Positions 34,789 to 60,887 of a DNA stretch of 64,000 nt are shown here, piece by piece. Positions within the stretch are counted from its first letter, which is position 1. Each line of letters begins with the position of its first letter. Made by a program: the position numbers and the translations under genes. The notes under the pieces are model-generated. The model was given only the letters and a program-made list of their open reading frames with translations, did not search any database and was not told where the DNA came from. Source of the stretch: Trichoplax adhaerens (lineage: Eukaryota > Animalia > Placozoa); assembly GCF_000150275.1 (NCBI RefSeq), contig NW_002060961.1, forward strand, positions 1,010,600 to 1,074,599. Direction: 5' to 3'.

Positions 34789-37700
34789 TCTTCAAGTGGT
34801 CCAGGAATTTGAATCTCGTTGTGGTGAAAAGGTTATCCTGGTAGGTGATAATTCGACCTTGAATCACAGTTGTAAAATTTACAATGGAATGAAACGTTTC
34901 TTTGCTCAAAGCCACCAATAGTATAATAAGTAGAAGACAGTGTTACTATTTTCTTGGTCGATTACCAGCTTTCAAGGACTAGAGAAGGAATAATCCTAAT
35001 TTTTTCAATAGCATGGATTGAACTTGTTTACCTAATGGCTGCAATGCTCGAGCTGACTGATCCGGTAGTTATGACAACAGCAGGAACACGACTGCACAGT
35101 TTAAGCAATGGAGAATGACAACGCCATGACTTGACAAGCAGCCAAGAATGATGATTAAGACAGCTACTTCTAATGATTTCAAGGATTAAAGGGAAGGAAT
35201 GACTATGCCATCTGGGAGAAATGGAATTAGTTATAGCTAAAAAGCTTTGGAAAGAATTTGCCAAGGATGCTATGCTGTACTGTAGCTCTTCGAAAGGTAG
35301 TAGTGGAGTAAAGAAAGCAATTGCAATTTCCTCATACTCTACGTCTACGACGTAGGTCATGTTTAGGCATAACTCCTACTAAAAATGGGCAGGGCAGCAG
35401 GCAGCCACCCGTGCGTTACATACAGTACATGGCACTGTATATGTACAATATATTGTACTGTAAAAAGGTTCCACTGTACTGTACACTGTACTGTACTGTA
35501 CAAGACGACTGTCTTCTTCTGGGTCACCTCCCATATTCCGTGTCCAATCGTCCTCTCCTGTCCACAGACAGTTGCTGTTGCTATGGCTATAGGTGGGCGT
35601 GGATACGGCATGCCTATGTTATGCTGTTGTGCTGAATTGCTAAAATAGAGAGTGTAGTGGTGATATTTTAAAAGTTGCCTATGGATCTCATACAGTACGT
35701 AAAAACAGCAAAGAATAGGTATAGTAAAAGAAGTTAATGATCTGATAAGAAAAATCCAAACTCATGTAGTTCCATAAGCCATATCGATACTATAGGATGC
35801 AAACTATGATTGGATGTCAATTTATACTTTTTATCCTACATTGAACGAGTTCTAGCTTTTAACCATGGAAAGTTAAGAAAAGGAAATAATCGTTATACAC
35901 ATTAAATCCAATCAAGACATTATGCAAATAAAATATTTCATAAACGATAGATTAAACCTATACATTGTCACTGTAAGTCAAATCTTAAAGGATTTAAATT
36001 ATGTCAAATTTGTGCAAATAACTGCACTAATCATTATTAAACGGGTACAGTTTCATTAGCAAGATTTAAAATTACAGATAATAATCAATTATTAATCGTA
36101 GACTTTTAAGATTCCCGATAATTACATTATGAAGAAATTATCTATAAAGCAAATAGTTAATCAGAAATTGATCATAATTGAACAATCAGTAATATTGAAT
36201 TTCTATTAGATGCATATTGTTATTGGCACAATCCACAACTAAAGTTTTCAGATAACTCTTTATCGTAAGAATTCGATGTTTACAGTTTCTAGCTTCAAGT
36301 ATGATGCATGATTGCATTTTATGGTATCAAGTACAATTATTGCGGTGGAGAGCTCGATAATTTAGTAAAGTTGAATTCGTAGGCTTCAAAGTTATAATTA
36401 ATACGATACACTGTTATTAAGAAAATAAGTTTATTATATTAATTTACGCTGTAAATGGCATATGGTACATAAAGTAAATAGGCAGCTATAACAATCATAA
36501 TTATAAAACCAACAAAGATATGAAACAAAAATGAACAATATTTCTACCCTTGGGGTAGAGCACGCATAGGAGAAAGACTGCAGAACTATAAATATCGTAT
36601 AGTATACCATAATTAGGCACAATTGCATGGTGTGATGGAGATTTATTTCATAGAAGTTCAATCTAGTTAAAACGTTAACTACTTTTGAACTGAACTAATA
36701 TAACAAGCAATCAGCAATCGGACTGCAAAAAAAGAACGTACCATATGCTATGATTGTGTATGCAATCAATCTTGTTAAAGCGCACTTGTTAAGTTATGCT
36801 GTTGCAAAAATATCACTGCACAACAATAATGCTGCAATATCGTGTTGTACCGTAAGCATGAGTATATGCTTATAAGCATAGATCTGTAATTTACCTTAGG
36901 TAGCAACATATCAAACAACATATTTAGCAGTATACTGGTACCTATAGTAACAAAAACGTAGGTAATATGTCATGCCATATCTAATGGTGCAATTTTTACT
37001 TTTACTACGTCGAAATATATCACTAGATAATTATAAATTTGATCTTGTTAAAACTCACTATATCTTGCTTGAATCGCATGAAAATAGCTATTAAGTCGTA
37101 GTAAGAAACTACCATCTCCAATGACCTAATAAATGCTTAAGTAATAAGTCACACTATATGTGGCATTTTTACTAGATCTGTTACCGTAAAATATATCAGT
37201 AGTTTATAAAAAGCTGGACTTTATTAAAACGCACTGTTTTGCTTGAGTTATATAAAAATGGCTTTCAGGTTGTAGTTATAAAACTAGTGTCTCAAACAAC
37301 GTTGATTAATATATTCAATTCTATCCTATTACTCTCAGTATAGCGATGCGTAAAATTTGGCGTTCGACTAATGTTTTTAATAATATTTCATAACGTTGTA
37401 ATAAAGTGTCTTCTCCATAGTACAACAAGAACTGCTGTTTCTTATAAACTTCACTTTATTAAATAAGATTAGGTTTGTCTTATAACTACCAAGGATTATC
37501 TAGCTGCAATACGGCTATCTCTAGACTTTCTTAATTAATACGGCAATTTTCACGATTTATATACAATTAGTTACGTAATGATTTTCCTTCAATGCAATCA
37601 TATCTTAACAAATATGTCATAAGGTCATATCTAAATTTGCTATCGTGTTATCAATGCATAATTTACGCTCTTAATTAAAGCGATACAATACAAATCTCAA

Positions 37701-38102
37701 AGTACTAACTTACTTAGCGCAGTCTGTTATCATATCAGAACTAGTAGACCCCTCACTCGTAACACGCAATATATTGTACATGCACAATTTCCTGACTGAG
37801 CATTATACTGTATATACACAAAATGGTTCACCTGCAATTTACAACTTCATAAATTAATTAAACCAAATTAAATTTTCAATGTTGCTTTCTGTAGTCTTAA
37901 CTTAACAGATAAAGTACTATAAATTCTCGATTAAATAATATAATTTTATGATTTTCGTACGGTATATAACGATACTATAGCAACGTGATGACCTGTAAGA
38001 AACGCGTAGTGCGTACTTTTCTCTCCTTTTGGGGGGGGGGGGGGGGAAAGTGGAAAGGGGAAAGGGGGAAAAATGGTAATATAAGGATCTCAAAAAAATT
38101 GC

Positions 38103-38152
38103 NNNNNNNNNNNNNNNNNNNNNNNNNNNNNNNNNNNNNNNNNNNNNNNNNN
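38103..38152. other. Assembly gap (50 N)
   Basis: Run of n, preceded by low-quality-looking poly-G. Confidence 1.
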
Positions 38153-39270
38153 GTATATGTGATACACGACTATAGCACAGATATTAACCGCACTACAGTC
38201 AGTCCACCAATAACTTCCACTAAGATTCAATTTTAATTAACTTAGCGATGCGTAAAGACTGGCATCCAATCGATACTTTTAACAATGATTTATAACATAT
38301 ACGTGATTCACGATTACAGTATAGCGCAGACATTAATTGTATGACATTCAATAGGCCTATAGATTCCATTTAGAATAATTCTAATTAACTAGCGATGAGT
38401 CAAAATTGCATCCAACTGAGACTTTTAACTATGATTTATAAAGGGTATGTATGATTGTTACATGACAATCAGTGTTGCTTCTCCTGGGCTTTAATCCGAT
38501 AATTGATACACAAAAATGTCAATCATTTACATCATTATAATAGTAATGGTGTAAATGATAATTTCTTAGGCCACAGATGTAAAATAGTCAATGGTAAAGG
38601 GTTTGATAATGTGGTCAATGACAATAATATAATTACCCTTTCCTGGAAACTGAAATTAAAAAGCTTATTGAATTACATTACGATATCCTATACAATCCTT
38701 CTATAAATTTAGATACAGAGGAAATCAGTATGATACTTCCACCTATTCAATCATTCGAATAGGGTGGTGAACATTGTTAATAATGATAAGAATAAAGTTG
38801 GAGGTAGACAAGAGAAAAATAATTTGCTTCTGACAAAACGAAAAGCGCTGAAAAAGCCTCGTTTTTTTCAAGCTACTTTCAATTTAATCTCATAATCGAA
38901 ACGTAACGATTCCAATTCGATACACAATCTCCAGTTAGATATAAAGATATCTTTCTTAAATACAGAAATATCAGGTAATCAACAATTTAAATTAGAATTT
39001 TGATTTCATGAAGAGATACAATTTACTGAATTACGTGTGAAGGTGCTTTTATAATGATTAGCGACAGATTGATTACAGTTATAAATCAGCCCAACCTTTC
39101 TTTACCGATACTTCTTTGGCGATAATTATCTTTTTTTAGCATAAAGGTGCTTGAAATAACCTTAAAGGATACATTTATACAATACAAAAACATCAAGTAA
39201 TTGTCAATTCACTAATATGTGATATTTTTGGACATTTTAGAGAGCATAGCAACGCAAAAGTTAGTCAATC

Positions 39271-42200
39271 ATGAGACACCAAACCAGACCCAATCCTAAC
39301 GATTATTTGAAACCATTGGTAGACATTGGATTTAATCACTTCAATAAAGGTGAATTTGATCAAGCTCGAATTTGTTTTGAAAAAGCACTACAAAAAATTC
39401 AAGAAATTGGACATACCAGTATATCGCATGATCGATTGAAATTTGATCTTTACTTACAAATTTCACAAACTTATTATAAGCAATTAAAGTACAACGATGC
39501 CATCGAATTCTGCCAAAAAGCAGAAAATATGGCAAGAACTTTTAAACACCGCCTACATATCGCTCAAGCTCTAGAAAGTCGAGGCAAGATTAAAGTAAAA
39601 CAACAACTATTTCATGCAGCTCTTGATGATTATAATGAAGCTCTACAGTTAAAAATAGCCGTGCACGGCAGTAAACATATTGATGTTGCCGACAGTTACC
39701 ATGCTATCGCAGAGATCCATGTCCTACAGCATCAGTATAATCATGCGCTAACACTACAAGAAAATGGTCTCAAAATAAGGCTCAACAAAATGGGAAGAGA
39801 TCATTTTCTAGTAGCTCAATCCTATTACAGTATTGGGTATACTTACTATCATTTACAACAATATGATAAAGCACTGAAAAATTATAAAAATTGCCTGAAT
39901 ATTCGGTTAAAAAAATCAGATAATGATTACTTAGGCCTTGCCGAAACTTATAATGGCTTAGGTGAAACTTATTTTAAATTGCATGATGATGAAAGTGCTA
40001 TCTCTATGTATCAAAAAAGTCTAAATCTCAAGGTATCTGTCTTTGGAGATTACCAAATTGAAAATAGTAATTTATACTATCGTCTTAGTGTAGTATACCT
40101 ACGCCAAAAGCAGTTTGAAGAAGCTTTTTTCGCTATCCAAAAATGTTTAAAAATTAAATTAGAATACGACGGAAATAATCATATTGATGTTGCAAAATGC
40201 TACAACACCATAGCTTGTATTTATACTGGCCAAGGACTATATCATGATTCGGCCATGATGTTTCGAAAAAGTTTACAAATTAAACTAAATATAGCAGGAT
40301 ATGACCAATTTGATATTGCCGATAGCTATCATAATTGTGGTAATGCCTACTTGAAAATTGAAGAATATCAGCAAGCATTATTAATGTACCAAAAAAGTCT
40401 CTTTATTCTCTTACAAATCGCTAAAAATGACTCCCATCGCAAACATATCGCGGATTTATATCGCGTTATTGCCAAAGTTTATTCGTACCAATGCAAAGAT
40501 GCAGAAGCTATCGTTATGCTCGAAAAATATTGTAATATTATTTTAAGTCAACATGGAGAATGCCAAAAAGTGGCTGCTATCTACAAGGAAATAGCAAGTA
40601 AATACGAAAAACTGCACCAGCAAAATGAAGCTTCCCGTATGCATCAAGAAGCTTTGCGTATTATAAAGAATTTTTCGGATGAAAATGATAGCCCAAAATC
40701 GATAGCATTAGCACAACATGGTAATAAATATTCGACAGGGATTATCGTATACTAGAGTACTTGAAAAATGTATACTTTTAATTAAATTGTAATTGTTTAT
40801 TCCATTCGATATGACTCGATTTTATTACATCTTTAGTTGCAATATTTCGAAAAACTCATTGCATAATATCATTTTTACTGATGCTGAAATAGCTTTCTTA
40901 CCTCTCATTAAGCATTTTTGTAAGTTTTCTAATTTTACCTGTATTTCTACATCTTAATTATTTATTTAGCCATCGGGGATCCGAACTATTACAAAGCTTT
41001 CATGAAAGTCCTGAAAGATGAAAAATGTCGCAGTGATTGTACACCAATCGTATTTGTTGGCCCTGAAAATTCTGGTAAAACATCAATTATGAAATTATTC
41101 TCACGACAAGAACTGATTCCAAATCTAATGCCAACACAAATTATCGATAATCCTGGTATCATGATCGATTTAAATAGTTACAAAATTTTTGACAGTGATA
41201 CTTGTGACATTGGTAGGATACTGGATAGAAAAGTTGTTGCAGCTATAGAATCAACTAAATGGGGTATGATTTATCAAGAAGATATGAAAGATTCTAATCA
41301 TTCAAAATCATCCATAGCTAAAACTGCTGATGATTCTCGATTAAATAATGAAAAAATTCAGGCCTCTTTAATCACACCCAATCAATTGCATGAAGAAAGC
41401 ATTGGTAACTTAAAACCTTACGGTGATCATGACTACTTATCCAATGCTTATACTAAACCGGTAAATTTGAAACATTATTTGGATATCTTTAATAATTATT
41501 ACGAACACAGCTTAGTTATAGAAAGTGATGTCAAAACTCACGGCTACAATTGTGGTAAATTATGGGATTTTGGCGGAAACCCCATGCACTGGATTGCTCA
41601 TCAACCTTTCATGTCAGGGAATAGTATTTATATTCTCACTTATAACATTGCTCAAGATATTAATCAAATAGTGCAAACAACAGACATTGATCCTAATAAA
41701 ATGACTTATTTACAAACTATTGAAGAATGTATAACCAATATTGTTGGCAGGCATAGCAATCAGAATAGAATTGAGCCTTGCGATGATGATAATAGTGATT
41801 ATGATAATGATGGTATAAGTAATGAATATTCCTTACCTGTAATTATTTTGGTTGCATCTCATGGCGACTGCGTTCAAAATATCGAAGAACAACGCAGGTT
41901 ATTTGAAGGATTCGAGCAAGCTCTACTTGCCTCTTTACCACAATATGAGAAGCATATTTGCTCTTCAAGTATTATATTTAATTGTGATCCGCATGATACT
42001 AGCCCAGCTACAATCAGTCAACGCAAACAAAGCTGCCATCATTTGCAACAAATTATACAACGTTTCTATAATTCCTTACCTTTACTTAAAAATTTTATTC
42101 CTATTCGTTGGCAAATTATGTCCAATTTAATATTAAAATCGTCGAATAGATCATATCATCAAGTCAATTCTATATTAGTCGATAAAATTAATAAAATCAT

Positions 42201-43717
42201 GTTTGTTAACGAAATAAAACAATTATCAATAGATTGTGGTTTGTATCAAGGCGATCAAGATTTACATGATATGTTGAAATCTTTGCACAATCTCGGAGAT
42301 ATATTATATTTTCAAGACAATCAAGGTGAAGGAATCATTATAACTCAAATTGAATGGCTATCCGATATATTCCGAAGATTATTCACTATGGGTAAAAATG
42401 CAAGAAAAGTAATTGGAAGAAGATTCCTAATTAATTATGCAGCTCGATTTAAAGGTAAAATACCGCAATCATATCTAGATAACATATTAAAGAAGATCTC
42501 TATTACAGATAAACATAAACAAATTATATATCATTTAATGGAAAAATTCGATATGATTTATCCTATGGAAAAAGATGAAAATGATAATTCGGATGATTTG
42601 TATTACTTTGCACCGTTTACAGTAGAACCCCGTATAAGTTTAGGCCATATTAACTTAGCAAGATATCATGTATCAGATTGGCTATATATTGGTTATGATC
42701 AAAATGAGTTATCATTTATTCCTACTAGCGTATTCATTAGCCTTCTCGTGGCTTGTTTCAAGCAGTGGAAGAATTCAAAAGTTGAATTATACTATAATTG
42801 CGTTAAATATTACGTTAAAGCCAATCAATATTCGTATTATTTGATTGTTAAAAAAGCGAAGCGCCATATAGGCTTACGATATTACTGCGAAAAGGAGAGC
42901 AATGCCACGAAAGATAATATTACGAAAGTGATTGATGAAACTCGCCCTCAAGATTTTGTTTATAGTCAATTAATTGCAATTTTGAAGGAAAAGTTACCCA
43001 CTATTAATTGCAATAACTGCCAATTTAGCATACAGTGCCATTGCAATGAAATGGTTACTCTAAATGGATTAGATCAACGTGATTATGAAGCAATTGAGTG
43101 TCATTATTGTCATCAAATTGTTAGGACTCACTATTTGAAAGACTGGACGATTTATACAAGAAACTCAGAAGGTAATGTCTATTGTAATTTTGTGTTAACA
43201 ATGATTAGTAGAGCGGTAAATGTGAGATGATTAGCATTAGTTCAGATACCGGTATACAATCAAATTCTATTGGTACCATTTACATATGAATTTAATCGAT
43301 AAAGCATCTATTTTTCTTTTTTTAGTCTAACCTAGAGACTAGAAAACTTTGCATACTTATGCATCAATAGCTAGTCTCAATCACTGCTCGACACCAAACT
43401 CTATTATCGGCATACTAACTGATTTCTACATTAATTCTTTTATTGTAGTGCCTCAATGTTATTTTTTCAAGATTTCTAAGCACATTGGGATAGATTGGAC
43501 TAAATTAGCAGCAAAGCTGGATGCTAACATTGATGTAGATACAATCAAAGTTGAAAATCAAACAGTTTTTGATCGTGCATTAAAGTTATTAAATGAGTGG
43601 TTTAATAGAAATTGTAGCAGTAATGCAACTCAAAATTTGATTACTGCTTTGAGAGATATTGATCGATATGATATTCTACTAAAGTTAGGAATCTCTGGCA
43701 ATAAACTTGACATGTAG
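39271..43717 (+). CDS. Roco protein 1: TPR array - Roc GTPase - COR - Cys cluster - Death domain (~1306 aa)
   Basis: Exons 39271-40720, 40970-43171 and 43449-43717 join three separate ORFs through phase-1 GT-AG introns. 42-aa TPRs (IADSYHNCGNAY...), P-loop GPENSGKTS, G3 LWDFGG, G4-like LVASHGD, COR signatures IPIRW and LKSLHNLGDILYF, Death domain IGIDWTKLAAKL...LLNEWF...LITALRDIDRYDI. Confidence 0.88.
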
Positions 43718-44166
43718 ACCCTTATGAGCATTTTGACCCAATATTTACTTGATTACTGTATTAATGTAGGTAATATTGGATGTGATTGATCGATTTATGA
43801 TGGATTTTACATGAAGTTAATCCGATTTACCCTTCTAAATATGCTTATATTTTGGATATTAGCCAAAAGTTAAATATCATAGGCTCTAAAATTGTAAGAG
43901 AGCTATTCTAACATGGTATAGTTGAGTACTACAGAAACTAATAATGCTAAACTTCACCGAATATTAAATATTTTTGTCTTTAATCCTATGAGTTATGAAA
44001 AGAATCAATTTCATCTTCTATCGTATTGTATAAAACAATTTTGGCTGTGTATTACCTAAATGATGTTCTTTGTTTTCTGTTAAAATATTTTTGACCGTAA
44101 ATATTGTAATTATCACTTACCTATGATATTACTCCGATTAATTCAAGCGAAAAGTGAGCCAGTTTG

Positions 44167-44795
44167 TAATAAAGATATCATAATTCATCGGACATTATTT
44201 TTGATCTTTATTCATCAAAATAGAAGAATTTGTTGAACAAAATGCGAAATATTTACTGCGCCTGAATATAATACCACAAATAGAGGCTGCTGACAAAAAG
44301 AATATTTTATACAATAAATATAAAGCGTGATCGAAAATACTATTTTAATATCCTACAAGCTTGTTTCATATTTGGAAGCAAAGTGCAAGGAACTGAGCAA
44401 TTTGATAATAAAGCTATTTGTGGAGTACCCCGATGTTCTTCGTGATTCAAACTTTTAACTCTTCTAGTTCATTAACTAATGCTAATAAAGATATCGTAGT
44501 TCTTTGGACCTTGCTTTTAATCTTTACTCATCAAAATAAAAGAATTTCATAAAGGGAATGCGAAATACTTGCGCCTTAGCCTAATATTACCGATAGTTGT
44601 TCCTGATAGAAAAACTGTATTTACATAATTAATATAAAGTGCCATCGAAAATACTATTAAAGATCCAATAAGCTCGTCTTATATTTGGGCTGAGCTAGTA
44701 GCGAACTGAACAATTTGATGATATAGCCATCTATGAAGCGCGCTGCCGTTTTTGTGATTCAAATTTTAGTTTCTCCAGGTTAATTAACCATCGTT
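44167..44795. repeat. Diverged direct tandem duplication, 316 bp x2
   Basis: taataaagatatc starts at 44167 and 44483; colinear blocks tcatcaaaata, atgcgaaata, atcgaaaatactatt, caatttgat and gtgattcaaa. Confidence 0.8.
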
Positions 44796-47700
44796 ATGTT
44801 GGTAATTAGATTTAATTACGTAATTTCATTTGTTTCTATATATTGATCATGAACAAAAACAACGCAATATAATGCTCAACTAAACACTATTACTATTCAC
44901 AGTGTCTACAGCCTCTTTGAGGGCCCACAACAGGTTCTGTTCTTGCCAGATAGAGGAATTTCAGTACATTGCAAATTTATAGCAACGAGCTAACAATTGG
45001 AATACTGCACTATAAAGTTCACAATTTTAATATCGAACTTTGAACATCAGACAAGGATTATAGAAACATTAGAAGTTCAACAATCTCTCTACCTAAAGTA
45101 ATGCATGGAATTTATAAGAAAAGCATAGGAATTAATGAATGGTCCCGATTATCCTCATCCATTGAAATTATAATTAGTACCGTAGGCGATGGAGCAATAT
45201 GAATGACAATGGCATTGAGTAGAAAGTAATGTCTGGCAGGTTTATTAGCTCTAACGGGTGACGGAGAAAGAGATTCTAAATAATATCGTTACCTACGGTA
45301 CTTCTAACTCATAACAAGGTACTCTACTCGAAGAAAAATCCCTTATTTTCTCTATTTTCTTAGCAAATTCTATACCAGTCAGGTTTCTAAGTTCGAAAGA
45401 CTCAACTTGGACCGAATCATCTCACAAGCTAGTAGACTAATTTCAAAGACTCTGTTGCATTATATAATTATGGCAAGTTTTACTGTACTAGCGCTTCTAA
45501 TACTATTGAAAATACCCTTGCTCTGTTTTTAGTTACTGAATTCTTTGCCTGTGGGAAAGATCTTTTAAGGTTGCATAGTAAATAGCGATGGTGATAGTAA
45601 GTTCTTATTAATCATACTCGTATATTGTTATTGTACTCTATATTGGTCAATATGATTCTTTTGTTGACAAAAGAATCTCTACCATCAGATAAAAAATCAA
45701 TCATCATCACTCATTATAATTACTTAACCCAAGTCTGTTAATATAAAAAGAAAAAAGTGGCAGGAGTATTCTTAACTGCATTAAAAGCGATAATATCACT
45801 TTCCTGCTATGAGTATCGTTAGATGTACAAGTATTTAGTTCCTTTACAAGCTCTAATCGTATGATATCAAGGATTGAAAGTACAGCGATTATTGAATAAG
45901 TTATTATTGAACTTTTCATCGAACAGTAGCGTTGGTGGGAACGATCAGCATTCAAAGTCTAAATTTGACGACAATGCTGTTAACTTTGTTATGTACTAGT
46001 AATACTATCAGCATAGTGAGCAAATATAGAGATACTGCATAGTCTAGTAAAAAGACGGCAATTACTTGCTGGTTTTAGAATACCTTGAATAGACCATGTT
46101 ATATGACGTAATAGTTTGTAGAACTTTACACTAGTATGCTATGTTTTATTTATGCGAAAGCAACCGAAAATGATGTAGATTATGCGTGCAAACCACGTTG
46201 AGCGTCTACTTTGTCTAGCGCGATTGACCTATAATAATTATAATTAATGGATAATATGAAGAAAGACAACCATTGTGTAAGAGAGCGAAAGAGTATTTCA
46301 TAATTATGTGATTTAGTATGACAATTTTAATTATTGGTGGTGTTCGTAGGATAAAAAAGGAAATGTTCACTGTTATGTCTGTTAGTTGATATATGAGTCT
46401 ATTTCAATGTTGCTACGACCCACTGTCGATTGATTGATTGGTAGTTTTACATCATTGTTGATAAACAAAGCACGATATTAAATGGCTGTCACGGCATGAA
46501 TCACCCGGAAGAGTCAATGACTAAATTTAGTGATTAACATTTCTATATGAAGATAGCTAATAATGACTTACAATAAGAGCTAGGGTAGGAGAAAATTAAT
46601 GATATGCCACTAGACAGTATTTTGCGGTATTTAATGATATGCCATCGTAATTTATCGAAATTTAATAATATGGATCAATTTAAAATTAGCTACCGTATAA
46701 CAACTCTTACAACAGTACAGTATAATTTACTATATAACAAAATGAATTGATTATAGTGTTATGTCTTGTAACGCTTGTGATGAATATCCTGAAGATATTC
46801 AATTTTAGAGGATACTATAAATAATTCTGTGTATAGACATACCGTAATCTAATTATCTAGAATCGTTCAGTATATCTCTAAGATTATGAATAATTTCTGT
46901 ATTAATTTAGCTATTCCAATAAGAACTAAATTGCATGATCTGTTATGACTCATACATGATAGCTGGCGCCGGAGGGTAATTAAGCTCGGCAGATAATTGA
47001 ATAAAAGAAAAGTGCTATAGTTCTTTACCGCAGAAGCAAAGGCGTCTAAATTCTTGTGAGGTAGTTAAGGATAATAAATCCCGGAAGCTATAGTAATTTA
47101 GAGGTTTGTTTTACGTTGTCTTTACCGCGGTTTTTTTGTTTTATTGTTTCTTTAGTATAAAATAATAAATTATCTGGATTATAATTAATTGATTACAATC
47201 ACATGCCTACACCTAATAGTATTAACAAAGCCGACTAGTGTAAAAAAATTACAAGAGCATCCTGAACAGTGCAAGTAGCAAAAAAACATTTTCTTTCTTG
47301 AGGATCAGTAGACATATGCAGTTCTGTAGCAAAATCTTCTGGCTTGGGATAGTATTAATAAAAGATATGCAAAAAAGTCAAATTAACATACTTATATTCT
47401 AACTTTTATCAATCTTAATCCACGTCTTTAAAACGCAAAATCGATATCACCGTTAATTAATGTTATAAATCAAATTTTCTTCTTTCAGTTAATCTTTTAA
47501 TTTTTCGCATTTCTAAATCTTAACCTATACCATTAACGAACAATTGACATCATTATTCATTAACGAACCAATTTTCTTTGTAAGCTTAATCTTTCATGTC
47601 TACAGACATGTAAAAATAGATGGTATGGTGATTTTATCACATTAATGTATTTCAAAACTGTAACAATAAAATGATTATATTACAAGGTATTCGCTAGTTA

Positions 47701-48072
47701 TTTACATATTTAATTACACCCCTTAGCTATTAATCGAAACTAGAACTATTGTTCCATTTTTAAATTCACCGAGAATATGATAGTAATAATTTGAGGCATT
47801 CGTAATTTAGAAAAGAATTCGTAACAATGACATATGCCTATTAAACTGCCGGATTAGCTACTATACGTATCATTGAATAACTTGATATAGCAATAAAAAG
47901 GAAATATACGATCTGTTTTTATTCTTGCTGCATTCTAGTCAGAAGTAAGTGTTTGCCGTTCCGTTCGTCCACAGCTATCTATCGCATTAAAACTGCACCC
48001 TTTCACAGTTTAAAACGCTGCTCACTAATACCCACAAGCCTACAGCTAAAACTGATTTCCTTTCGACAACCA

Positions 48073-51000
48073 ATGGAAATAAAACTTCAACGTAAAGAAG
48101 CTAATAAGCTTTTTAAACAAGGATCCTATGAAGAAGCTCGATCTCTTTATAGGCAAGTGTTGGATCGAATTGGAGGGTCTAATGTATTGCCTCGATTCGA
48201 GATCACACTCCAGATTGTTAAAACCTCTATTTATCTCCAAGATTACGAGATTGCAAAAAGTGACTGTGAGAGTGCTAAACTACTAGCAAGAAGATTAAGT
48301 GACAAGAAACTTCTCCAATGCGAGAAATATTTAGGTGAGATTTGCCATCAACAAGGTAATCATGAAGACGCATTACAATATTACAATTTAGCTTACCGAC
48401 TATCAGTACAAATTAACGGAAGCAAACATCTTACAACTGCTGATATATCGCACCAGATTGGAGATGTATACGTAGCAATGCAACATTACAGCGATGCTTT
48501 AACGTCCTATAAGCAAGCACTGAAGGTAAGACAAAAAAGACTTGCGAAATTCAGCAAATTGATCGCTAACTCATACTTTGCTATTGGAAATGTTTACTCT
48601 TGTGAAAGAGAGTATAAACTAGCCATCACAAACTTTCAAGAGAGTTTAGCTATTCGACACAAACTGTTTGAAAATAATCATTTGCTTATTGCTGACTGCT
48701 ACGAAAGATTAGCGCAGATATGTAACGATCAATGTAAATTTCATGAAGCTGCATCATTGTTTGAAAAATGTCTTAAAATTTACCTAGTAGTTGGTGGTAA
48801 AACAAATTTCGATGTTGCACAACTTTACCGTAACATTGGATTGGCCAAATTTGATAATGGTGATCATGGAGAGGCCCTTTCTAGTCATCAGAAATGCTTA
48901 GAAATCTGCATCAACATATATGGAGAAGAGCATCCTAACGTAGCTATGTCGTATAGCAGTTTGGCTTCTATATACTATCAGCAAGAGGAATACCAGCAAG
49001 CTTATGATATGTTTCGAAAGTCTCTGGATATTAATTTGAAAGTATTAGGTAGTAATCACTGGATAATTGCTGATACTTATCATAATATCGGTAATATTCA
49101 TTATAATCAAGAAAAATGCAGCGATGCTTTAAAGATGTACCAGGTAGCTATGTTCATGCGACTGAAACAAACAAGAAATGATCATATTCGACATCGTATT
49201 GCTGATTCGTATTTCGTAGTTGCTAATGTATATGCAAAGCAGTCAAAGTACCATGATGCTCTGGAAATGTTTCTAAAGTCTGTCAGTATTTTCCAAAATT
49301 TATATGGAGAAAGTAATATTGTAGCCATAATTTATCAAAAAATTGCGGAGTTATACGATAGGGATGGCAGAGCTGACGACGCAAATGATATGCGATCGAG
49401 AGCTTCGGAAATATTCGATAGATTAGAGCATGGACAAATTCCAACACCGATACAAACTACATCACCAGGTACAGTATTACAAGTCAAACTGTATAATAGA
49501 GCAGAAATTTCCAACTGAAATATTTTTATCAAAGTAATTAGCCAAAGTTGCGACTTGATGGTAGCTAATTTCTTACCAACAACTACTAGTTTTACGCGTA
49601 TACAAAATGCCTTTCATAAGATACCATAAGGTAGAGACGCTGAAATCTATTCCTAACGGAAGCATAACTTAGTTTATATCTTTCATTTTATAAGACATTG
49701 TATTGTATGCTTTACTTTACATATAAGATATATTAAATATTCATTTTCAGCCCTAAAATCATTCATTTTACAAGCTAATTCTAAATTTTGTTGTTGGACG
49801 TTTCAAAGTGTTACTTGCATTTATTTATTACGCGCTTAATTTAACTAGACGTTATTGTTGTTGTAGTTATCGTCGAAAATGATTACTTCAAGGCTTACAT
49901 GATTGCTACAATATATGAAGAATGCCATAGCGATTGCACACGCCTCACATTTATTGGTCCTAGCGATTCTGGTAAAAATTTTATCGTCAAGTTGTTAACG
50001 AAGCAAAATCTTACATCGCCATATGTCGCTGAAAATACTGAAGCAATGCTGGATCTTTCCACTGGTAATATCTTTAAACAGAAGACAGATGACTATCGTA
50101 AAATAGTCGGTAAAAAGATTGCTGCAACAATGCTGTCGATAACGCAACAGATGGAGAGTCAGTATAAAATGGAAGAGAGTTCTTTATCTGAGCTAATACT
50201 TTCGAAAATTGAAACAGTCCCGGAGGCGAACCCTACTATCATTTCTTCTTTCACTTCTGAATATGATGAAAACAGACTTGAAGAAAGAATTTCAAATACC
50301 GATACGAATCTAAACGCTAGTCCAAGCACTCAATATGCTAGTGTAGATACTAGACGATATTTAGATACATTCAATGATTTCATGCAGCAGTCTCTTCAAC
50401 TATGTGATGCAGACAATTCTCAAAGATCTTATTACAGCAATGTTTGGGAATTCGGAAGTAAGATATCGTGGAATCTACGCCAACTTTTTACGCTTCGTAA
50501 CAGCATCTATATTTTGACATTGGACATTACTGAAGCTACAAACCAAACATCTGCAACGAACGAGGAGCGTACAACATTGAATACCTTTCTAGATAGTATC
50601 AAAGAATGTTTAGTCTCTGTTCTTGACGGTCACTGCGATGATGCCATTTCAGATCCAATTCAAGTTGACGATGCTGACTTGGATGTCGGTATATATGAAG
50701 AATTTGCATTACCTGTCGTTATCTTTGTTGGATTTCATAATGATTGCGTAACCTCAGATACTGTAAGAATTTTCAATAATTTAACAGAAACAATTTTTTC
50801 AACCTTTCCACAGTACAGTCGACATATTATACCGTCCGATGTTGTGTTTAATTGCAATCCGAAAGATACTAGCTCTTATGCAATTGAACAGCGTGAGACA
50901 TCTTGTCAGGCATTACGCAAATTAATTCAGCATTTTACTAAATTAATGCCTGTATTGCAAGACTGTGTTCCAATACGATGGCATATCTTGCTATCTATAC

Positions 51001-52631
51001 TGCATAAATCCGTAATTAACGATGGATGCGCGTGCAGTTCAAACAGCAGTAACTTCCCGCGTAGAGTGATGTCCGTGCACGAGGTAGAGGAACTTCTTCA
51101 AGATTGTGGATTATTTCGAAGCGATCAAGATACGTGCAAGATGTTACAACATTTGCATGATCTAGGAGAAATATTGTATGTTAAGCCGGATTATGGCAAA
51201 GAATACATTATTACTCAAGTCGAATGGTTAGCGAAGATTTTCCAAGTTCTCTTTGCATCCGCTTTCGGCCAAAAAGCAGACGCTACGAGAAGATTCTCTT
51301 TCACCAGGATTACTAAAATTAAGACAGACGGTATAATGAAAGAAAGTCATATAACGAACGTATTAAGAGAGTTTAGTTTAGACGACAAAGAGAAAGAAGC
51401 AATATTACAGCTATTAGAAAATTACAATATCATATGTCCAAGAAATAATGCGAATGCCAATAACGAAAGTGTTGCAGCGGCTGGACGTGAGTACTTCGTA
51501 CCGATTATCATTACTCCAAATTTCAAATCGAAAATTGATATTGGCAGTCTAAATGATGCTGGATATCATGTATCAGAAAGCTTATATATCCAATTCGAGG
51601 ATAATTCGTATATTCCTGATGTGATATTCTATCCTTTCCTTATTTCTTGCTTGAGAAAGTGGAATAATCTGGAAGCAGAATTATTTTATAGAGGTGCTAA
51701 ACTATTTTTGGAGAATGATTTATACTACCTGCTTATTGTCAAGGAGAGATCCAAAATTAGTTTGCGGTATTTCTATAAGAAAAGTACTAATCTGTCTGAC
51801 GAACTGATTAAGAAATTAGTTTGGAAAAGTCGTCCACAAGAGCTTATTCAAGGCAGATTTTTCGATACTGCCAAGAAGTATATGCCAAAGTCCATGAATA
51901 GTAGTTTAGCAAATTATGTTAAATGTAGCGAATGTGGCCAATTCTTAAATTTGTTCAGTTTCACAGAAGATAGTCGTTGTAAAAAGTGTATTTATTGCGG
52001 TAAAACTGCAAAATCCATGGGTGATTGGATAAACCTGGGTAAGTTTGGGATAGACGAAGTGTAGTAAAATTACCATATACTTTATACTATGATAGTAATT
52101 TGCTCATAATTGTTGTCGGTACCATTTCTAGTTTAGGTTCAACTGAACAGGCTATACCTTTTAGCAACTACTATGATAGATTTATGCTTATTTGTGTCAT
52201 ATATTTATTCGTAGAAGCCTATAGAATAGAATTAAATAAAGTTATTGCTTTTACATCAAGTAAGATAATAATTTACGCTGTAATTATTGTTACTTACAGG
52301 GTCTACAGCTGATACAAGGCGCCATTTTTTCACCGTAGCTAAAGAAATTGGTATCGATTGGGAGAAGCTAGCGGGTGCACTAGGCATACATTGTAACGAG
52401 ACCTCAGTTATCGACGCCGAGAACAAAAATTATTATAATAAAGCAAATCAACTCTTGGAGAAATGGTATACGCAAAATTACTGCCTCAAAGCTACTTACA
52501 CTCTAGCATGTGCTCTAGATCATATTGAAAGACGCGATATTCTTGCAAAGCTCAAGTTCAATTCGTTGGAACTGTCTGATCTTAAAACTGCCGGAAGAAC
52601 CGATATTCTTGAGCGGCTAAATTGGCATTAG
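48073..52631 (+). CDS. Roco protein 2: TPR array - degenerate Roc - COR - Cys cluster - Death domain (~1299 aa)
   Basis: Exons 48073-49468, 49867-52038 and 52300-52631, with the same phase-1 intron layout as paralogue 1. P-loop GPSDSGKNF, G3 VWEFGS, G4-like VGFHND, COR VPIRW and LQHLHDLGEILY, Death EIGIDWEKLAGAL...LLEKWY. Start ATG 48073 assumed; the ORF track starts at a TTG. Confidence 0.86.
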
Positions 52632-53384: not shown

Positions 53385-53750
53385 TTAATTATTGACCAGA
53401 AATTTTCATCGATTAAAGGGACCGTAGAAAAAGAACATGGGAGACTCATAGACTATGCGAATGATGTGCGAGTAGATTCTAGATACATTGTTGTATATTG
53501 TGAGCATATTTTTAATTATTGACCTGAAATTTTCCTAGATTAAAGGGACTGTGGATAAAGAATTCGTAGGCTATGCGAATTACTGTATGTGCGAGTAGAT
53601 TCGAGATACATTGTTGTATAATGTGGGCATATTTTTAATTATTGACCAGGAATTTTCTTAGATTAAAGGGATTGTAGAAAAAGAATAGGTTATGCGAATT
53701 CTGTGCGAGTAGATTCTAGATCCATTGCTGTATACTGTAAACATATTAGC
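53385..53750. repeat. Tandem repeat ~125 bp x3
   Basis: ttaattattgacc...gattaaaggga...tatgcgaat...gtgcgagtagatt...attg recurs near 53385, 53512 and 53635. Confidence 0.85.
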
Positions 53751-58595: not shown

Positions 58596-60887
58596 TTATA
58601 TCTAGATAGTATCCAATTAGTAACGTCAAGAAAATGAGTCGCAGGTAGTGATGAGCACATGTAGTCATACACCAGCACATCCAGTAAAGAAGTGCTTTCC
58701 AAAACTGACCATCATAGTCAATTTCATATTAGAAATACTGCTCAATCAACATTGCTACGCGTATGGTAAATATCGACAACTTACATCATCAATTTCATCA
58801 TCTTCTTGATCAATATCGAAAGTGATATCGTCTTCTTCTTCGTTTTCCATTGTTCCTGTATCAGCAATTTTAGCTGCAAACGATTGAATACATTGGTTGT
58901 CAATTCAAGCGCAATGATACATCATAATGAAAAGATTGATGAATGTACCATTTTCAGGCAATTCTCCATACGCTTTTAGATTTCTTGCTTCATCGGCCGT
59001 ATATTTCAGAATAACATCAGCTTTAGCATCCTAATTGGATAATTGGATCAATCTGTTCAGTCATCATTGTGAACAACGATAATAATAATACAGAATGTTT
59101 ACAGTAGCGTTAGCTAATAAATCATGCCAGTCATGTGTGATCACTTAAGAGCACATTTTCAAAACAGGAATCCACTTACAAATCATTTCAATGACACTAA
59201 ATGCATCATTGACTTTATCTCAAAGCGTTAAGATAGATGAAAATAAAGCAGCTGGGAATAATTATGAATTCAATCGATTGAGATATGTAGGTAGTACGCA
59301 CCTGGTAGTCTCTTAACCCAAGAAGTATAATATCACCTTGATTAATCCATACCTGCAATTTGAAATGAGAGTTTTAAGAGTTAGCATTTACTGGCATTTA
59401 GGCCAAAACTATTTCATGTCTTCAACTGATTATTCTCCAATTGAGGTAGGTCAAACTATTTTATGTCTTGTATGAGCTATTCTCAAATTGACGTCGGTCA
59501 AACTATTTCATGTCTTGTACTGGTTCTCTCCCAATTGACGTAGGTCAAACTATTTCATTTCATTTGTACTGGCTATTCTTAAATTGACGTAGGTCAAGCT
59601 ATTTCATGTTTTGTACTGGTTATTTTCCAATTGAGGTAGGTTAAACTATTTTATGTCTTGTACTGGCTATTCTCAAATTGACTTCGGTCAAACTATTTCA
59701 TTTCTTGTACTGGCTATTCTCCAATTGAGGTAGGTCAAACTATTTCATTTCATTTGTACTGGCTATTCTCAAATTGATGTAGGTAAAGCTATTATATGTC
59801 TTGTACTGGTTCTTTTCCAATTGACGTAGGTCAAACTATTTCATTTCATTTGTACTGGCTATTCTCAAATTGACGTCGAACAGTTGTTGTCGAATTGATT
59901 TTAGCTACAGAAATGATCAGTAAGCAAAGCTTGAATTGAGGCACTACTGTAACATAAGAAGATTGACAATCTTTCAAGTCATACACTGATCAACTAGTAT
60001 TTTGATGCCAATTTGGATAGACAAGAGCATTGTCTTGTATCAGCACACCTTGAATGATGTATTTTGCAGTGGAAGATTCGTTATGGACATTTGTTACGGT
60101 GTGTGGTATTGGAGGTTATCATCAAAGTAATTTTCAACTCAAATATACTGTGGGTAAAATGAGGGTCAATTACCGAGGACAAAGATGACATGGAAGAAGT
60201 GGCACTGCATGTTTACAAACTATTCCATAAAGGTAGGAAAACGAACATGGCCGTGATGTGGGAATGATTGCTTTGGTGCATTCTACTTGTATGTGAACAA
60301 ACAGAATCACTTAGATAGCCTACTGATTGCTATTGCGGCGAACAATTGATGACACTGTATGGGAAGAATATGAAAATGAATTTCCAGCACGTATGTGTGT
60401 ATTTTCAATTGTATTTGTAGCCAGTAAACGATACCTTTTTACGTAACTTTCCACGTATATGGCATAACCGTTTGGTTCCATCAAAGCAAAACGCTTCCAA
60501 TCTGCCATTGCCTAACATCTTAATGACTTGAGCGTATTCTGAAAGTGGTTTATCTCATTAGTATGGCATGAAGTCAAGAGGAATGTGTAGAACAAGGAAA
60601 GGCATATCATACTATCATCATGCTTCTGTACAAATAAGAGCTAAAATGGATATAAAAACCTTGTCCATCTTCTTTAAAAATCAGTTCACGCTTCTCGGAT
60701 TCATTTTCATTCTTACCACGGCGGCGATTTTTACCTCCCTTACCTAGACACGAGTATTGGCAATTTTAGACGCTATCGTCATTCTCTCCATGCTATCCTC
60801 TACAATCAAGTAGTCAATCATGATCGTTGCACACTTGTCTCTTGTGCATCGCTAAAAACGCTAATAAATACCTTTATTTTTGGGCAT
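58596..60887 (-). CDS. EIF1A: Eukaryotic translation initiation factor 1A (143 aa)
   Basis: Exons 60887-60872, 60743-60660, 60538-60435, 59352-59302, 59030-58949, 58873-58785 and 58601-58596. Translation [112 protein letters not shown]...IDDI*. Confidence 0.97.
59401..59877. repeat. Minisatellite, 47/49 bp unit x10, in eIF1A intron 3
   Basis: ggtcaaactatttcatgtcttgtactggctattctcaaattgacgta; units start at 59401, 59449, 59496, 59543, 59592, 59639, 59686, 59733, 59782 and 59829. Confidence 0.95.

What the first reader, a model, noticed from the sequence alone, without database searches (positions are those of the whole stretch)
39271..52631. Tandem pair of TPR-Roc-COR-Zn-Death Roco genes: a candidate NLR-like sensor/signalling module
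Seen: six separate ORFs splice cleanly into two ~1300-aa paralogues. Both have three coding exons, one per module (TPR / Roc-COR / Death), all phase-1 introns, and the exon-2 acceptor exactly 32 nt before the same Met. Established: TPR arrays are ligand-binding scaffolds, Roc-COR is a dimerising GTPase switch, and Death domains recruit signalling adaptors. Inference: this is a kinase-less sensor-switch-effector receptor built like an NLR, but with a Roco GTPase in place of the STAND ATPase. The two copies are strongly diverged and sit among conserved housekeeping genes, as expected of an innate-immune or cell-death receptor family. Roco expansions in placozoans have been reported in general terms, so the novelty would be this pair and its function.
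Basis: partly seen in the sequence, partly recalled or inferred. Interest (0 to 1): 0.85.

Follow-up and report, generated by a model that had tools for sequence, protein, structure and literature searches.

The report
Two adjacent placozoan TPR-Roco-Death genes
These are two real, already annotated Trichoplax adhaerens genes from a large published family of TPR-Roc-COR-Death GTPase proteins. The gene models hold up, the immune-receptor role is untested, and the new details are that one copy looks GTPase-dead and the other is missing at this locus in the one sister-lineage assembly available.

Summary
Both junctions of gene 1 appear in RNA-like contigs. Gene 2's exact junctions differ between the public models and remain unresolved.

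Each protein has KLC/NPHP3-type TPRs, a Roc-COR module, a conserved four-cysteine element and a Death domain. The Roc-COR module is supported by a profile match to C. tepidum Roco (E 3.8e-11), and both AlphaFold models match only LRRK1, LRRK2 and prokaryotic Roco at the top.

The pair is not special in kind. The genome holds at least 54 loci of this Roc-COR type, 24 of them with a Death exon just downstream. The expansion was published (Civiero 2014), as was the idea that this GTPase replaces the STAND NTPase (Kaur 2021). This scan has met the family before on other DNA of this genome.

New here:
- The two genes are sisters on long branches.
- Gene 2 alone deviates at G1, G2, G3 and G4, yet stays intact, with pN/pS about 0.26 against its H2 orthologue.
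- An 8.2-kb segment holding all of gene 1 is absent from the collinear Trichoplax sp. H2 contig.

An immune or cell-death sensor role is plausible but unshown. Interest is low to moderate.

The parts
39271..40720 (+). Gene 1 (TRIADDRAFT_61019) exon 1: start codon and KLC/NPHP3-type TPR array
   Evidence: Pfam TPR_12 6e-54, 7 stretches. PDB kinesin light chain TPR E about 1e-16. Equals residues 1-483 of P0001. RNA contig begins at 39239.
40721..40969 (+). Gene 1 intron 1 (GT..AG, phase 1)
   Evidence: Sequence read directly. Joint in run X6, shorter side 27 nt.
40970..43171 (+). Gene 1 exon 2: Roc, 143-aa interswitch insert, COR-A, COR-B and Cys4 element
   Evidence: COR-A 2.9e-14. Family profile against CtRoco 3DPU E 3.8e-11. 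AF2 model pTM 0.78, top 33 Foldseek hits all LRRK1/LRRK2/CtRoco/MbRoco.
41059..41082 (+). Gene 1 P-loop GPENSGKT (canonical G1)
41563..41577 (+). Gene 1 G3 WDFGG (DxxG)
   Evidence: Aligned to DFGGQ of CtRoco.
41854..41868 (+). Gene 1 G4-like ASHGD ([ST]HxD, the family's form of NKxD)
   Evidence: 27 of 29 family sequences carry [ST]HxD.
43036..43113 (+). Gene 1 Cys4 (zinc-ribbon-like) element after COR-B
   Evidence: Invariant C679/C681 plus a second CxxC. Two beta-hairpins in the model.
43172..43448 (+). Gene 1 intron 2 (GT..AG, phase 1)
   Evidence: Sequence read directly. Joint in run X5, 255 nt on the shorter side. Zero depth in the intron.
43449..43717 (+). Gene 1 exon 3: Death domain and stop codon
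   Evidence: Pfam Death 1.1e-13. PDB ankyrin-1 death domain 1.7e-10, MyD88 4.5e-3.
43718..44191 (+). Probable gene 1 3' UTR
   Evidence: RNA-like contigs at 43778-44191 in three runs. AATAAA at 44168. Contigs cannot show transcript ends, so the limit is approximate.
48073..49468 (+). Gene 2 (TRIADDRAFT_61020) exon 1: first ATG and TPR array
   Evidence: Pfam TPR_12 4.4e-70. Both public models start at this ATG.
49867..52038 (+). Gene 2 exon 2: degenerate Roc, insert, COR and Cys4 element. The acceptor may instead be 49849.
   Evidence: COR-A 3.1e-9. AF2 pTM 0.75, top 33 Foldseek hits all Roco proteins. The H2 model uses the acceptor at 49849.
49956..49979 (+). Gene 2 degenerate P-loop GPSDSGKN (Ser/Thr after Lys lost)
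   Evidence: The only one of 22 family sequences without GxxxxGK[ST].
50445..50459 (+). Gene 2 degenerate G3 WEFGS (family: WDFGG)
50730..50744 (+). Gene 2 degenerate G4 GFHND (family: [ST]HxD)
51924..51998 (+). Gene 2 Cys4 element
52300..52631 (+). Gene 2 exon 3: Death domain and stop codon
   Evidence: Pfam Death 3.2e-10. Junction 52038/52300 is used by the H2 model.
36301..44522 (.). 8.2-kb segment present here but absent from the collinear Trichoplax sp. H2 contig. It holds all of gene 1 with 3 kb upstream and 0.8 kb downstream.
   Evidence: L031 aligns at 98.8-99.4% on both sides and skips this stretch, with about 35 bp of filler in its place. Gene 1 and gene 2 lie in one gap-free contig; the only N run is 38103-38152.

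Best explanation
Two neighbouring, intact genes of Trichoplax adhaerens (TRIADDRAFT_61019 and TRIADDRAFT_61020) belong to a large placozoan family of kinase-less Roco proteins. Each protein has these parts, from N- to C-terminus:
- an N-terminal kinesin-light-chain/NPHP3-type TPR solenoid;
- a Roc GTPase domain carrying a 120-160-aa helix-loop-helix insert between strands beta2 and beta3;
- COR-A and COR-B;
- a small Cys4 zinc-ribbon-like element;
- a C-terminal Death domain.

The two genes are old tandem duplicates: sisters in the tree and about a third identical.

Shown here: the gene structure, transcription and splicing of gene 1, the domain identities and the Roc-COR fold.

Inferred: they are cytosolic signalling scaffolds. 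The TPR array binds a protein or ligand, the Roc-COR unit converts that into a nucleotide-dependent conformational or dimerisation change, and the Death domain then recruits other death-domain proteins. The genome has at least 118 Death exons. This is the same logic as DAPK1 and as NLRs, so a cell-death or innate-immune role is the likeliest function.

Gene 1 keeps all the nucleotide-binding motifs. Gene 2 has lost the key residues of G1, G2, G3 and G4, and is best read as a conserved pseudo-GTPase that can still scaffold but not switch in the canonical way.
For: - Gene models: public proteins match exon by exon.
- Splicing: both gene 1 splice joints appear in RNA-like contigs of two studies, and the introns are empty.
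- Domains: Pfam TPR_12, COR-A and Death are above their cut-offs in both genes.
- Roco membership: the family profile hits CtRoco at 3.8e-11, MbRoco at 3.3e-9 and LRRK2 Roc at about 6e-6. Both AF2 models (pTM 0.78 and 0.75) have only Roco proteins among their top 33 PDB matches, with TM up to 0.72 on COR. COR-A is found in 29 of 29 family exons and Roc in 26 of 29.
- Family size: 54 Roc-COR loci, 24 of them with a Death exon within 2 kb downstream.
- Sister relation: support 100/99 in the ML tree, and gene 2's best non-self hit for every exon is gene 1.
- Motif survey.
- Constraint on gene 2: the frame is intact in both H1 and H2, with 5 synonymous against 5 non-synonymous changes, pN/pS 0.26, binomial P 0.036.
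- Relatives elsewhere carry Roc-COR with Death, DED, NACHT or kinase-ZU5 domains.
Against: - No functional data of any kind exist. GTP binding, dimerisation, ligand and partners are all untested.
- The sister grouping joins the two longest branches of the tree, so long-branch attraction is possible.
- The constraint test on gene 2 rests on only 10 substitutions.
- Expression of gene 2 was not checked with reads here.
- Divergence between the two genes is not concentrated in the TPR 'sensor'.
- dN/dS in young paralogue pairs is only modestly higher in TPR (0.61-1.0) than in Roc-COR (0.46-0.57). This gives no clear sign of diversifying selection.
Confidence: 0.75

Rival explanations
1. The same proteins have a housekeeping-type role and are not immune receptors. 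They would regulate the cytoskeleton, vesicle traffic or cilia, as LRRK1/2, kinesin light chain and nephrocystin-3 do, with the Death domain serving only as an oligomerisation module.
For: The TPRs are closest to kinesin light chain and NPHP3. The best structural matches are LRRK1 and LRRK2. The Death domain is closest to the ankyrin death domain, a cytoskeletal adaptor. The flanking genes are housekeeping. There is no clear sign of positive selection.
Against: A family of at least 54 loci with tandem arrays, pseudogenes and presence/absence variation is the birth-and-death pattern of conflict-related genes, not of core trafficking factors. Relatives combine Roc-COR with DED, CARD, NACHT, Macro and TIR domains (PMC9334734).
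Confidence: 0.25
2. Gene 1 and gene 2 work together as a heteromeric pair, an active Roco with a pseudo-GTPase Roco joined through COR. This would resemble paired sensor/helper NLRs, in which one partner has a degenerate P-loop.
For: The two genes are adjacent, on the same strand and sisters. One is motif-intact and the other degenerate at four motifs. The degenerate copy is conserved. COR is the dimerisation device in C. tepidum Roco (established knowledge; structures 3DPU and 6HLU matched).
Against: The H2 contig keeps gene 2 but lacks gene 1, so gene 2 cannot strictly depend on gene 1 there. Any of about 50 paralogues could be the partner.
Confidence: 0.1
3. Gene 2 is a gene on its way to decay: a dead GTPase that has not yet acquired a stop codon.
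For: It has the longest branch in the family tree (1.86 against a median of 0.22). It has lost G1-G4. It gives no Pfam Roc hit. Its expression was not verified here.
Against: All three exons are open across about 3.9 kb in both H1 and H2. pN/pS is 0.26. The Roc-COR fold is still predicted with confidence. The evidence-based H2 annotation calls it as a gene (PMC6057997).
Confidence: 0.1
4. The TPR, GTPase and Death ORFs are separate genes.
For: None found.
Against: Contigs splice exon 1 to exon 2 and exon 2 to exon 3 in gene 1. All junctions are phase-compatible GT..AG. Three independent annotations give single proteins. The same exon order recurs at many loci.
Confidence: 0.02

Closest known systems
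Placozoan ROCO expansion (Civiero et al. 2014, Chem Biol, PMC4104024; cited in Teng et al. 2024, PMC11378527)
   Same: Same organism and same family: Roc-COR proteins surrounded by TPR repeats and by death or CARD domains, explained as lineage-specific duplication.
   Different: That survey counted 'at least 17' genes by blastp. Six-frame search here finds at least 54 loci of this subtype alone. No searchable paper names genes 61019 or 61020. The pseudo-GTPase state of 61020 and the absence of 61019 from the H2 contig were not mentioned in the passages of the papers read here.
DAPK1 (human death-associated protein kinase 1)
   Same: It is the one well-studied Roco with the order repeats, then Roc-COR, then a C-terminal Death domain, and with a role in cell death.
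   Different: DAPK1 has an N-terminal Ca/calmodulin-regulated kinase and ankyrin repeats. These genes have no kinase and carry TPRs instead. They also carry a 120-160-aa insert inside Roc and a Cys4 element, neither of which I know of in DAPK1 (own knowledge, not tested here).
Prokaryotic Roco (C. tepidum Roco, M. barkeri Roco2) and LRRK1/LRRK2
   Same: The Roc-COR tandem matches by profile (E 3.8e-11) and by fold (Foldseek E 1e-14 to 1e-7), with DFGG as G3.
   Different: Those proteins have LRR or ankyrin repeats in front and a kinase-WD40 part or nothing behind. They lack the insert between beta2 and beta3. Sequence identity is only 12-14%.
NLR / STAND receptors, including the placozoan NB-ARC-TPR proteins (Kamm et al. 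2019, PMC6321704), and the 'AP-GTPase replaces STAND' systems of Kaur et al. 2021 (PMC8195603)
   Same: A three-part logic of repeat sensor, NTP switch and death-fold adaptor. The TPRs are of the same broad type. Both are expanded gene families.
   Different: The switch is a Ras-like GTPase with COR, not a STAND ATPase, so no toroidal oligomer is expected. The domain order is reversed, with repeats N-terminal and the death fold C-terminal.
Roc-COR-Death proteins of other marine invertebrates (crinoid DED-Macro-Roc-COR-Death, amphioxus Ank-Roc-COR-Death, mollusc TPR-Roc clusters)
   Same: The same Roc-COR subtype (profile E 1e-48 to 1e-40). Roc is split in the same way, with the G1 region and the G3 region about 100-140 aa apart. 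Death tails are frequent.
   Different: The N-terminal modules differ. The TPR plus Cys4 plus Death combination at this scale was seen here only in Placozoa. Taxon sampling was small.

Membership tests
Roco proteins (Roc-COR tandem) | Ras-like Roc GTPase domain directly followed by COR | tested here: met
   The family profile matches both the Roc and the COR parts of CtRoco 3DPU (E 3.8e-11). The AF2 models of both genes align over 550-760 columns to LRRK1, LRRK2, CtRoco and MbRoco, and these fill the top 33 hits.
Roco proteins (Roc-COR tandem) | COR-A domain above Pfam's gathering score | tested here: met
   53.6 and 37.3 bits against a cut-off of 35.3. Found in 29 of 29 family exons.
Roco proteins (Roc-COR tandem) | Roc domain above Pfam's gathering score | tested here: inconclusive
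   Gene 1 scores 25.7 bits against a cut-off of 27, and gene 2 gives no hit. 26 of 29 family members match at E 0.01 or better, the best at 1.2e-12. The 120-160-aa insert splits the domain.
Roco proteins (Roc-COR tandem) | COR-B domain | tested here: inconclusive
   No Pfam COR-B hit. The models do align to the isolated COR structure 3DPT with TM 0.69-0.72.
Roco proteins (Roc-COR tandem) | Intact nucleotide-binding motifs G1 (GxxxxGK[ST]), G3 (DxxG) and G4 | tested here: met
   Gene 1 has GPENSGKT, DFGG and SHGD. Gene 2 does NOT meet this feature: it has GPSDSGKN, EFGS and FHND, and it lacks the conserved switch-I Thr.
Roco proteins (Roc-COR tandem) | GTP binding and hydrolysis, and nucleotide-dependent dimerisation through COR | not testable with these tools
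   Needs biochemistry.
DAPK1 orthologues | N-terminal Ca/CaM-regulated kinase domain and ankyrin repeats | tested here: not met
   No Pkinase or Ank hit in any exon; TPRs are found instead.
DAPK1 orthologues | C-terminal Death domain after Roc-COR | tested here: met
   Death scores 51.5 and 40.4 bits against a cut-off of 22.6.
NLR / STAND NTPases | NACHT or NB-ARC STAND ATPase as the central module | tested here: not met
   No NACHT or NB-ARC hit. The central module has a Ras-like Roc fold.
Death domain superfamily | Six-helix Death domain (Pfam PF00531) | tested here: met
   The PDB sequence search finds ankyrin-1 DD at 1.7e-10, MyD88 DD at 4.5e-3, and PIDD and FADD weakly. The fold of the exon-3 product was not modelled.

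The most novel reading that the evidence does not exclude
The locus encodes a paired receptor: an active Roco (gene 1) and a conserved pseudo-GTPase Roco (gene 2) that heterodimerise through COR. The active partner would be a presence/absence polymorphism between Trichoplax lineages or haplotypes. That would make it a GTPase-based counterpart of the sensor/helper NLR pairs of plants.
Probability: 0.08. Interest if true: 0.7.

Novelty: new member of a known kind. Interest (0 to 1): 0.3.

Why it matters
If these proteins do sense invaders or damage, placozoans would run a large cytosolic receptor repertoire on a Ras-like GTPase switch rather than a STAND ATPase. Placozoans lack LRR-type NLRs, RIG-I-like receptors and cGAS-STING (PMC6321704). 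That would bear on how death-fold signalling was wired in early animals, and on what the Roc-COR unit of LRRK2 and DAPK1 originally did.

This particular pair offers a natural contrast for biochemistry, since one copy is motif-intact and the other motif-dead. It also offers a natural knockout: gene 1 is absent at this locus in the H2 assembly, and no H2 orthologue of it is annotated.

On present evidence, however, it is one more instance of an already published family, and the function is still conjecture.

Tried and rejected
- Every search used single exons by reference or the public records P0001, P0152 and P0023.
- Read laying: its single call went to gene 1, so gene 2's junctions were not tested with reads.
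- Complex prediction (COR halves of gene 1 and gene 2): busy five times, then declared unavailable. Nothing was folded.
- The look-up of encoding contigs for P0001: no record.
- The search for homologous proteins with gene 2 exon 2: no hit at E 1e-20 within the allowed length range. The full-length models are just over that range, so this says little.
- Literature search for the two locus tags and accessions: no paper found.
- Gene 1 as a recent insertion copied from elsewhere: rejected, because the best paralogue in this genome is only 37% identical. The 3 kb upstream of gene 1 is also unique apart from one 345-bp dispersed repeat.
- Repeats or target-site duplications at the edges of the 8.2-kb segment: none found. 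There is only a 316-bp tandem duplication at the right edge.
- Positive selection on the TPRs: not shown.
- ORFs inside the H1-specific left part (36.3-39.3 kb): all under 85 aa; not pursued.

Full report
WHAT IS THERE

The window is Trichoplax adhaerens. The exon-2 ORF of the first gene is 100% identical to TRIADDRAFT_61019, a 1306-aa protein that UniProt calls 'Death domain-containing protein'.

- TPR_12/TPR_10 arrays: 6e-54 and 4e-70.
- COR-A: 2.9e-14 and 3.1e-9, both above the gathering score.
- Death: 1.1e-13 and 3.2e-10.
- Roc: just under the cut-off in gene 1 (25.7 bits against 27) and not detected in gene 2.

GENE MODELS

Read directly from the sequence, all four proposed introns are GT..AG and phase 1. 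Each exon-2 acceptor lies 32 nt before the Met that opens the long ORF. That Met is simply an internal residue of a conserved 'YYNAY.KAL' stretch that begins exon 2 in the whole family. The '32 nt' therefore reflects a homologous intron position and nothing more.

Instead I checked each exon translation against public proteins. The three exon pieces of gene 1 occupy residues 1-483, 485-1217 and 1219-1306 of TRIADDRAFT_61019, with one split codon at each junction.

Contigs of public runs laid on 38801-44300 show no depth inside either intron. They contain both joints:
- 43171/43449 in run X5, with 255 nt on the shorter side.
- 40720/40970 in run X6, with only 27 nt on the shorter side, which is weak.

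The two runs come from different studies. Contigs continue to about 44191, 20 nt past an AATAAA at 44168, which suggests a 3' UTR of about 470 nt.

Gene 2 is TRIADDRAFT_61020 (1314 aa). Its Trichoplax sp. H2 orthologue is RDD37412.1 (1305 aa, named 'Nephrocystin-3'). Both start at the ATG at 48073.

The H2 model comes from an evidence-based annotation (PMC6057997). The JGI model inserts a mini-exon near 52202-52258.

THE CENTRAL MODULE IS ROC-COR

A single-sequence search of the PDB gave only weak hits, but they were all Roco proteins.

I built an alignment of both window exons with 21 paralogous exons taken by reference from this genome and six ORFs from other assemblies (A1). Its profile hits:
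- C. tepidum Roco (3DPU) at E 3.8e-11, matching the P-loop region, the DFGG switch II region and COR-A.
- M. barkeri Roco2 at 3.3e-9.
- LRRK2 Roc at about 6e-6.

COR-A is found in 29 of 29 aligned exons and Roc in 26 of 29.

AlphaFold models gave pTM 0.78 for gene 1 and 0.75 for gene 2. Both have LRRK1, LRRK2, CtRoco and MbRoco as all of their top 33 Foldseek matches in the PDB. E-values run from 1e-14 to 1e-5, and TM is up to 0.72 when normalised on the isolated COR structure.

Membership in the Roco family is therefore supported for both genes.

FAMILY HALLMARKS

Two features mark this family.

The first is an insert of 119-163 residues between strand beta2 and the DxxG strand. In both models it forms a long helix, a low-confidence and polar loop, and a second helix. 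Non-placozoan relatives show the same split in their Pfam matches, with the G1 part and the G3 part about 100-140 residues apart.

The second is a CxxC...CxxC motif after COR-B, with two invariant cysteines. It is modelled as two beta-hairpins, like a zinc ribbon, in the gene 1 model. In the gene 2 model only the first hairpin is clear.

FAMILY CONTEXT

A six-frame search of the whole genome with gene 1's exon 2 gives 71 matches. These merge into 54 loci, 32 of them covering nearly the whole exon. This is a lower bound.

The Death profile finds 118 exons in the genome. 24 of the Roc-COR loci have a Death exon within 2 kb downstream on the same strand, and 8 have one upstream. The pair is therefore two members of a big family, not a special module.

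Civiero et al. 2014 already reported 'at least 17' ROCO genes in T. adhaerens with TPR, LRR, CARD and death domains (PMC4104024). Teng et al. 2024 repeat this (PMC11378527).

The idea that the 'AP-GTPase' with COR displaces STAND NTPases in conflict systems is set out by Kaur et al. 2021 (PMC8195603). In their description it sits behind fast-evolving repeats and in front of variable effector domains.

Kamm et al. 2019 list the placozoan NB-ARC/NACHT proteins with TPR or WD40 repeats; none of the passages I searched in that paper mention ROCO proteins or GTPases (PMC6321704).

Other notes of this scan describe the same family on other pieces of this genome and reached the same verdict.

Outside Placozoa, the nearest relatives by profile (E 1e-48 to 1e-40) are the following:
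- crinoid: DED-Macro-Roc-COR-Death;
- amphioxus: Ank-Roc-COR-Death;
- coral: NACHT-Roc;
- brittle star: Roc-COR-kinase-ZU5.

The ESM Atlas lists mollusc clusters with TPR_10/TPR_12 plus Roc and with Roc-COR-Death, and sponge clusters with CARD (leads only).

WHAT IS PARTICULAR TO THIS PAIR

1. Relationship. The two genes are 32-40% identical by domain: TPR 32.5%, Roc 35%, COR 35%, Death 39.5%. Gene 1's best paralogue by identity lies on another contig (37%). Even so, gene 2's best non-self match for each of its three exons is gene 1. An ML tree of 23 Roc-COR exons joins the two with 100/99 support, on the two longest terminal branches (0.97 and 1.86, against a median of 0.22). An old tandem duplication followed by fast divergence, fastest in gene 2, fits. 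Long-branch attraction cannot be excluded.

2. A pseudo-GTPase. In the alignment, the motifs compare as follows:

| Motif | Family | Gene 2 |
|---|---|---|
| G1 | GxxxxGK[ST] in 21 of 22 sequences | GPSDSGKN |
| Switch I | conserved Thr in 21 of 22 sequences | lacks the Thr |
| G3 | WDFGG | WEFGS |
| G4 | [ST]HxD in 27 of 29 sequences | FHND |

Gene 1 keeps all four motifs.

Gene 2 is nevertheless open through about 3.9 kb in both lineages. It differs from its H2 orthologue at 5 synonymous and 5 non-synonymous sites, giving pN/pS 0.26. Under neutrality about 8 of 10 changes would be non-synonymous; the one-sided binomial P is 0.036. The numbers are small. Even so, they favour a conserved pseudo-GTPase over a decaying gene. 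Another first-stage note on this window made the same motif observation.

3. Presence/absence. The H2 contig NOWV01000244.1 is collinear with the window at 98.8-99.4% identity, from TRAPPC10 through gene 2, GH99 and eIF-1A. It lacks window 36301-44522 and has about 35 bp of unrelated filler there instead.

The missing 8.2 kb holds the whole gene 1 transcription unit. In this assembly gene 1 and gene 2 lie in one gap-free contig; the only N run is 38103-38152. A scaffolding error here is therefore unlikely.

No near-identical donor copy exists, so gene 1 is old. The difference is best read as a deletion in the H2 haplotype that was assembled. No H2 protein in the length range searched is close to gene 1; the best are 33% identical.

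Both lineages are about 1% heterozygous and share alleles (PMC6057997). One RNA run labelled as a second organism carries gene 1's 5' end at 99% identity. The indel may therefore be a segregating or hemizygous allele rather than a fixed difference. I could not search the rest of the H2 assembly.

HOW IT LIKELY WORKS

Shown here: single transcripts encode TPR, Roc-COR-Cys4 and Death in that order.

From established knowledge of the parts:
- KLC-type TPR solenoids bind peptides or proteins.
- Roc-COR is a nucleotide-dependent conformational and dimerisation switch in C. tepidum Roco and the LRRKs.
- Death domains form homotypic oligomers.

Inference: these are cytosolic scaffolds that couple TPR-bound input to death-domain assembly. 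Gene 1 acts as a switchable member, and gene 2 as a constitutive or regulatory pseudo-GTPase.

A cell-death or immune role is the most likely one. The family's size, its tandem arrays, its pseudogenes, the presence/absence variation and the company its relatives keep (DED, CARD, NACHT, Macro, TIR) all point that way. Nothing here tests it.

The signals expected of a fast-evolving sensor are weak. Divergence between the two genes is even across domains. In young paralogue pairs elsewhere in the genome, dN/dS is 0.61-1.0 for TPR against 0.46-0.57 for Roc-COR.

The domain order is that of Roco proteins and DAPK1, not of NLRs. DAPK1 is the closest characterised protein in architecture, but these genes lack its kinase and ankyrin repeats.

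VERDICT

These are undescribed members of a known, published family. Three modest new details emerge: the sister relationship with asymmetric divergence, a conserved pseudo-GTPase copy, and the absence of the intact copy from the collinear H2 contig.

The complex prediction that might have tested a gene 1-gene 2 heterodimer was not available.

Noticed in passing
window 37397-37741: A dispersed repeat of about 345 bp with more than 40 copies across the genome at 72-81% identity (SINE- or MITE-like). It lies inside the H1-specific segment upstream of gene 1.
   Followed up: no
window 44167-44798: A tandem duplication of a unit of about 316 bp (81-85% identical), straddling the right edge of the segment missing in H2. 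H2 has one copy. Each unit begins with TAATAAAG, and gene 1's transcript contigs end about 20 nt after the first one.
   Followed up: partly
window 38103-38152: A run of 50 N (scaffold gap) 1.1 kb upstream of gene 1's start codon.
   Followed up: no
window 53448-53747; 59406-59876; 61931-62673: Three tandem-repeat arrays downstream of gene 2: 123 bp x 2.6, 47/96 bp x about 10, and 242 bp x 3. Copy structure differs between H1 and H2.
   Followed up: no
window 39239-39643 and 43778-43974: A metatranscriptomic RNA run labelled as a second organism (X11) holds gene 1's 5' end with 4 mismatches in 405 nt, and part of the 3' UTR with 1 mismatch. This may be a second allele or strain that carries gene 1.
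   Followed up: no
G000 C1389:264222-281082, C1404:1753451-1757547, C1413:141756-147047 and others: Eight Roc-COR loci have a Death exon upstream as well as, or instead of, downstream of the GTPase exon. Many paralogues lack a TPR exon within 1.5 kb. The family therefore has several architectures.
   Followed up: partly
L022 vs L025 (G000 C1372:118672-120648 and 95026-96957); L014 vs L016: In these young paralogue pairs the Roc-COR exon itself has dN/dS of 1.37 and 0.91. This means relaxed or diversifying evolution, or decay, in parts of the family.
   Followed up: no
P0057, P0073, P0054 (crinoid, coral, brittle star): Relatives with unusual fusions: DED-Macro-Roc-COR-Death, NACHT-Roc (a STAND and a Roco switch in one protein) and Roc-COR-kinase-ZU5.
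   Followed up: no
models mde1e5f209adb and mc67068c740c5: Below the Roco hits, both Roc-COR models draw weak Foldseek matches to heterotrimeric G-alpha subunits, which also carry a helical insertion in the GTPase core. These matches are more numerous for gene 2. TM is only 0.13-0.18, so this is probably not meaningful.
   Followed up: no
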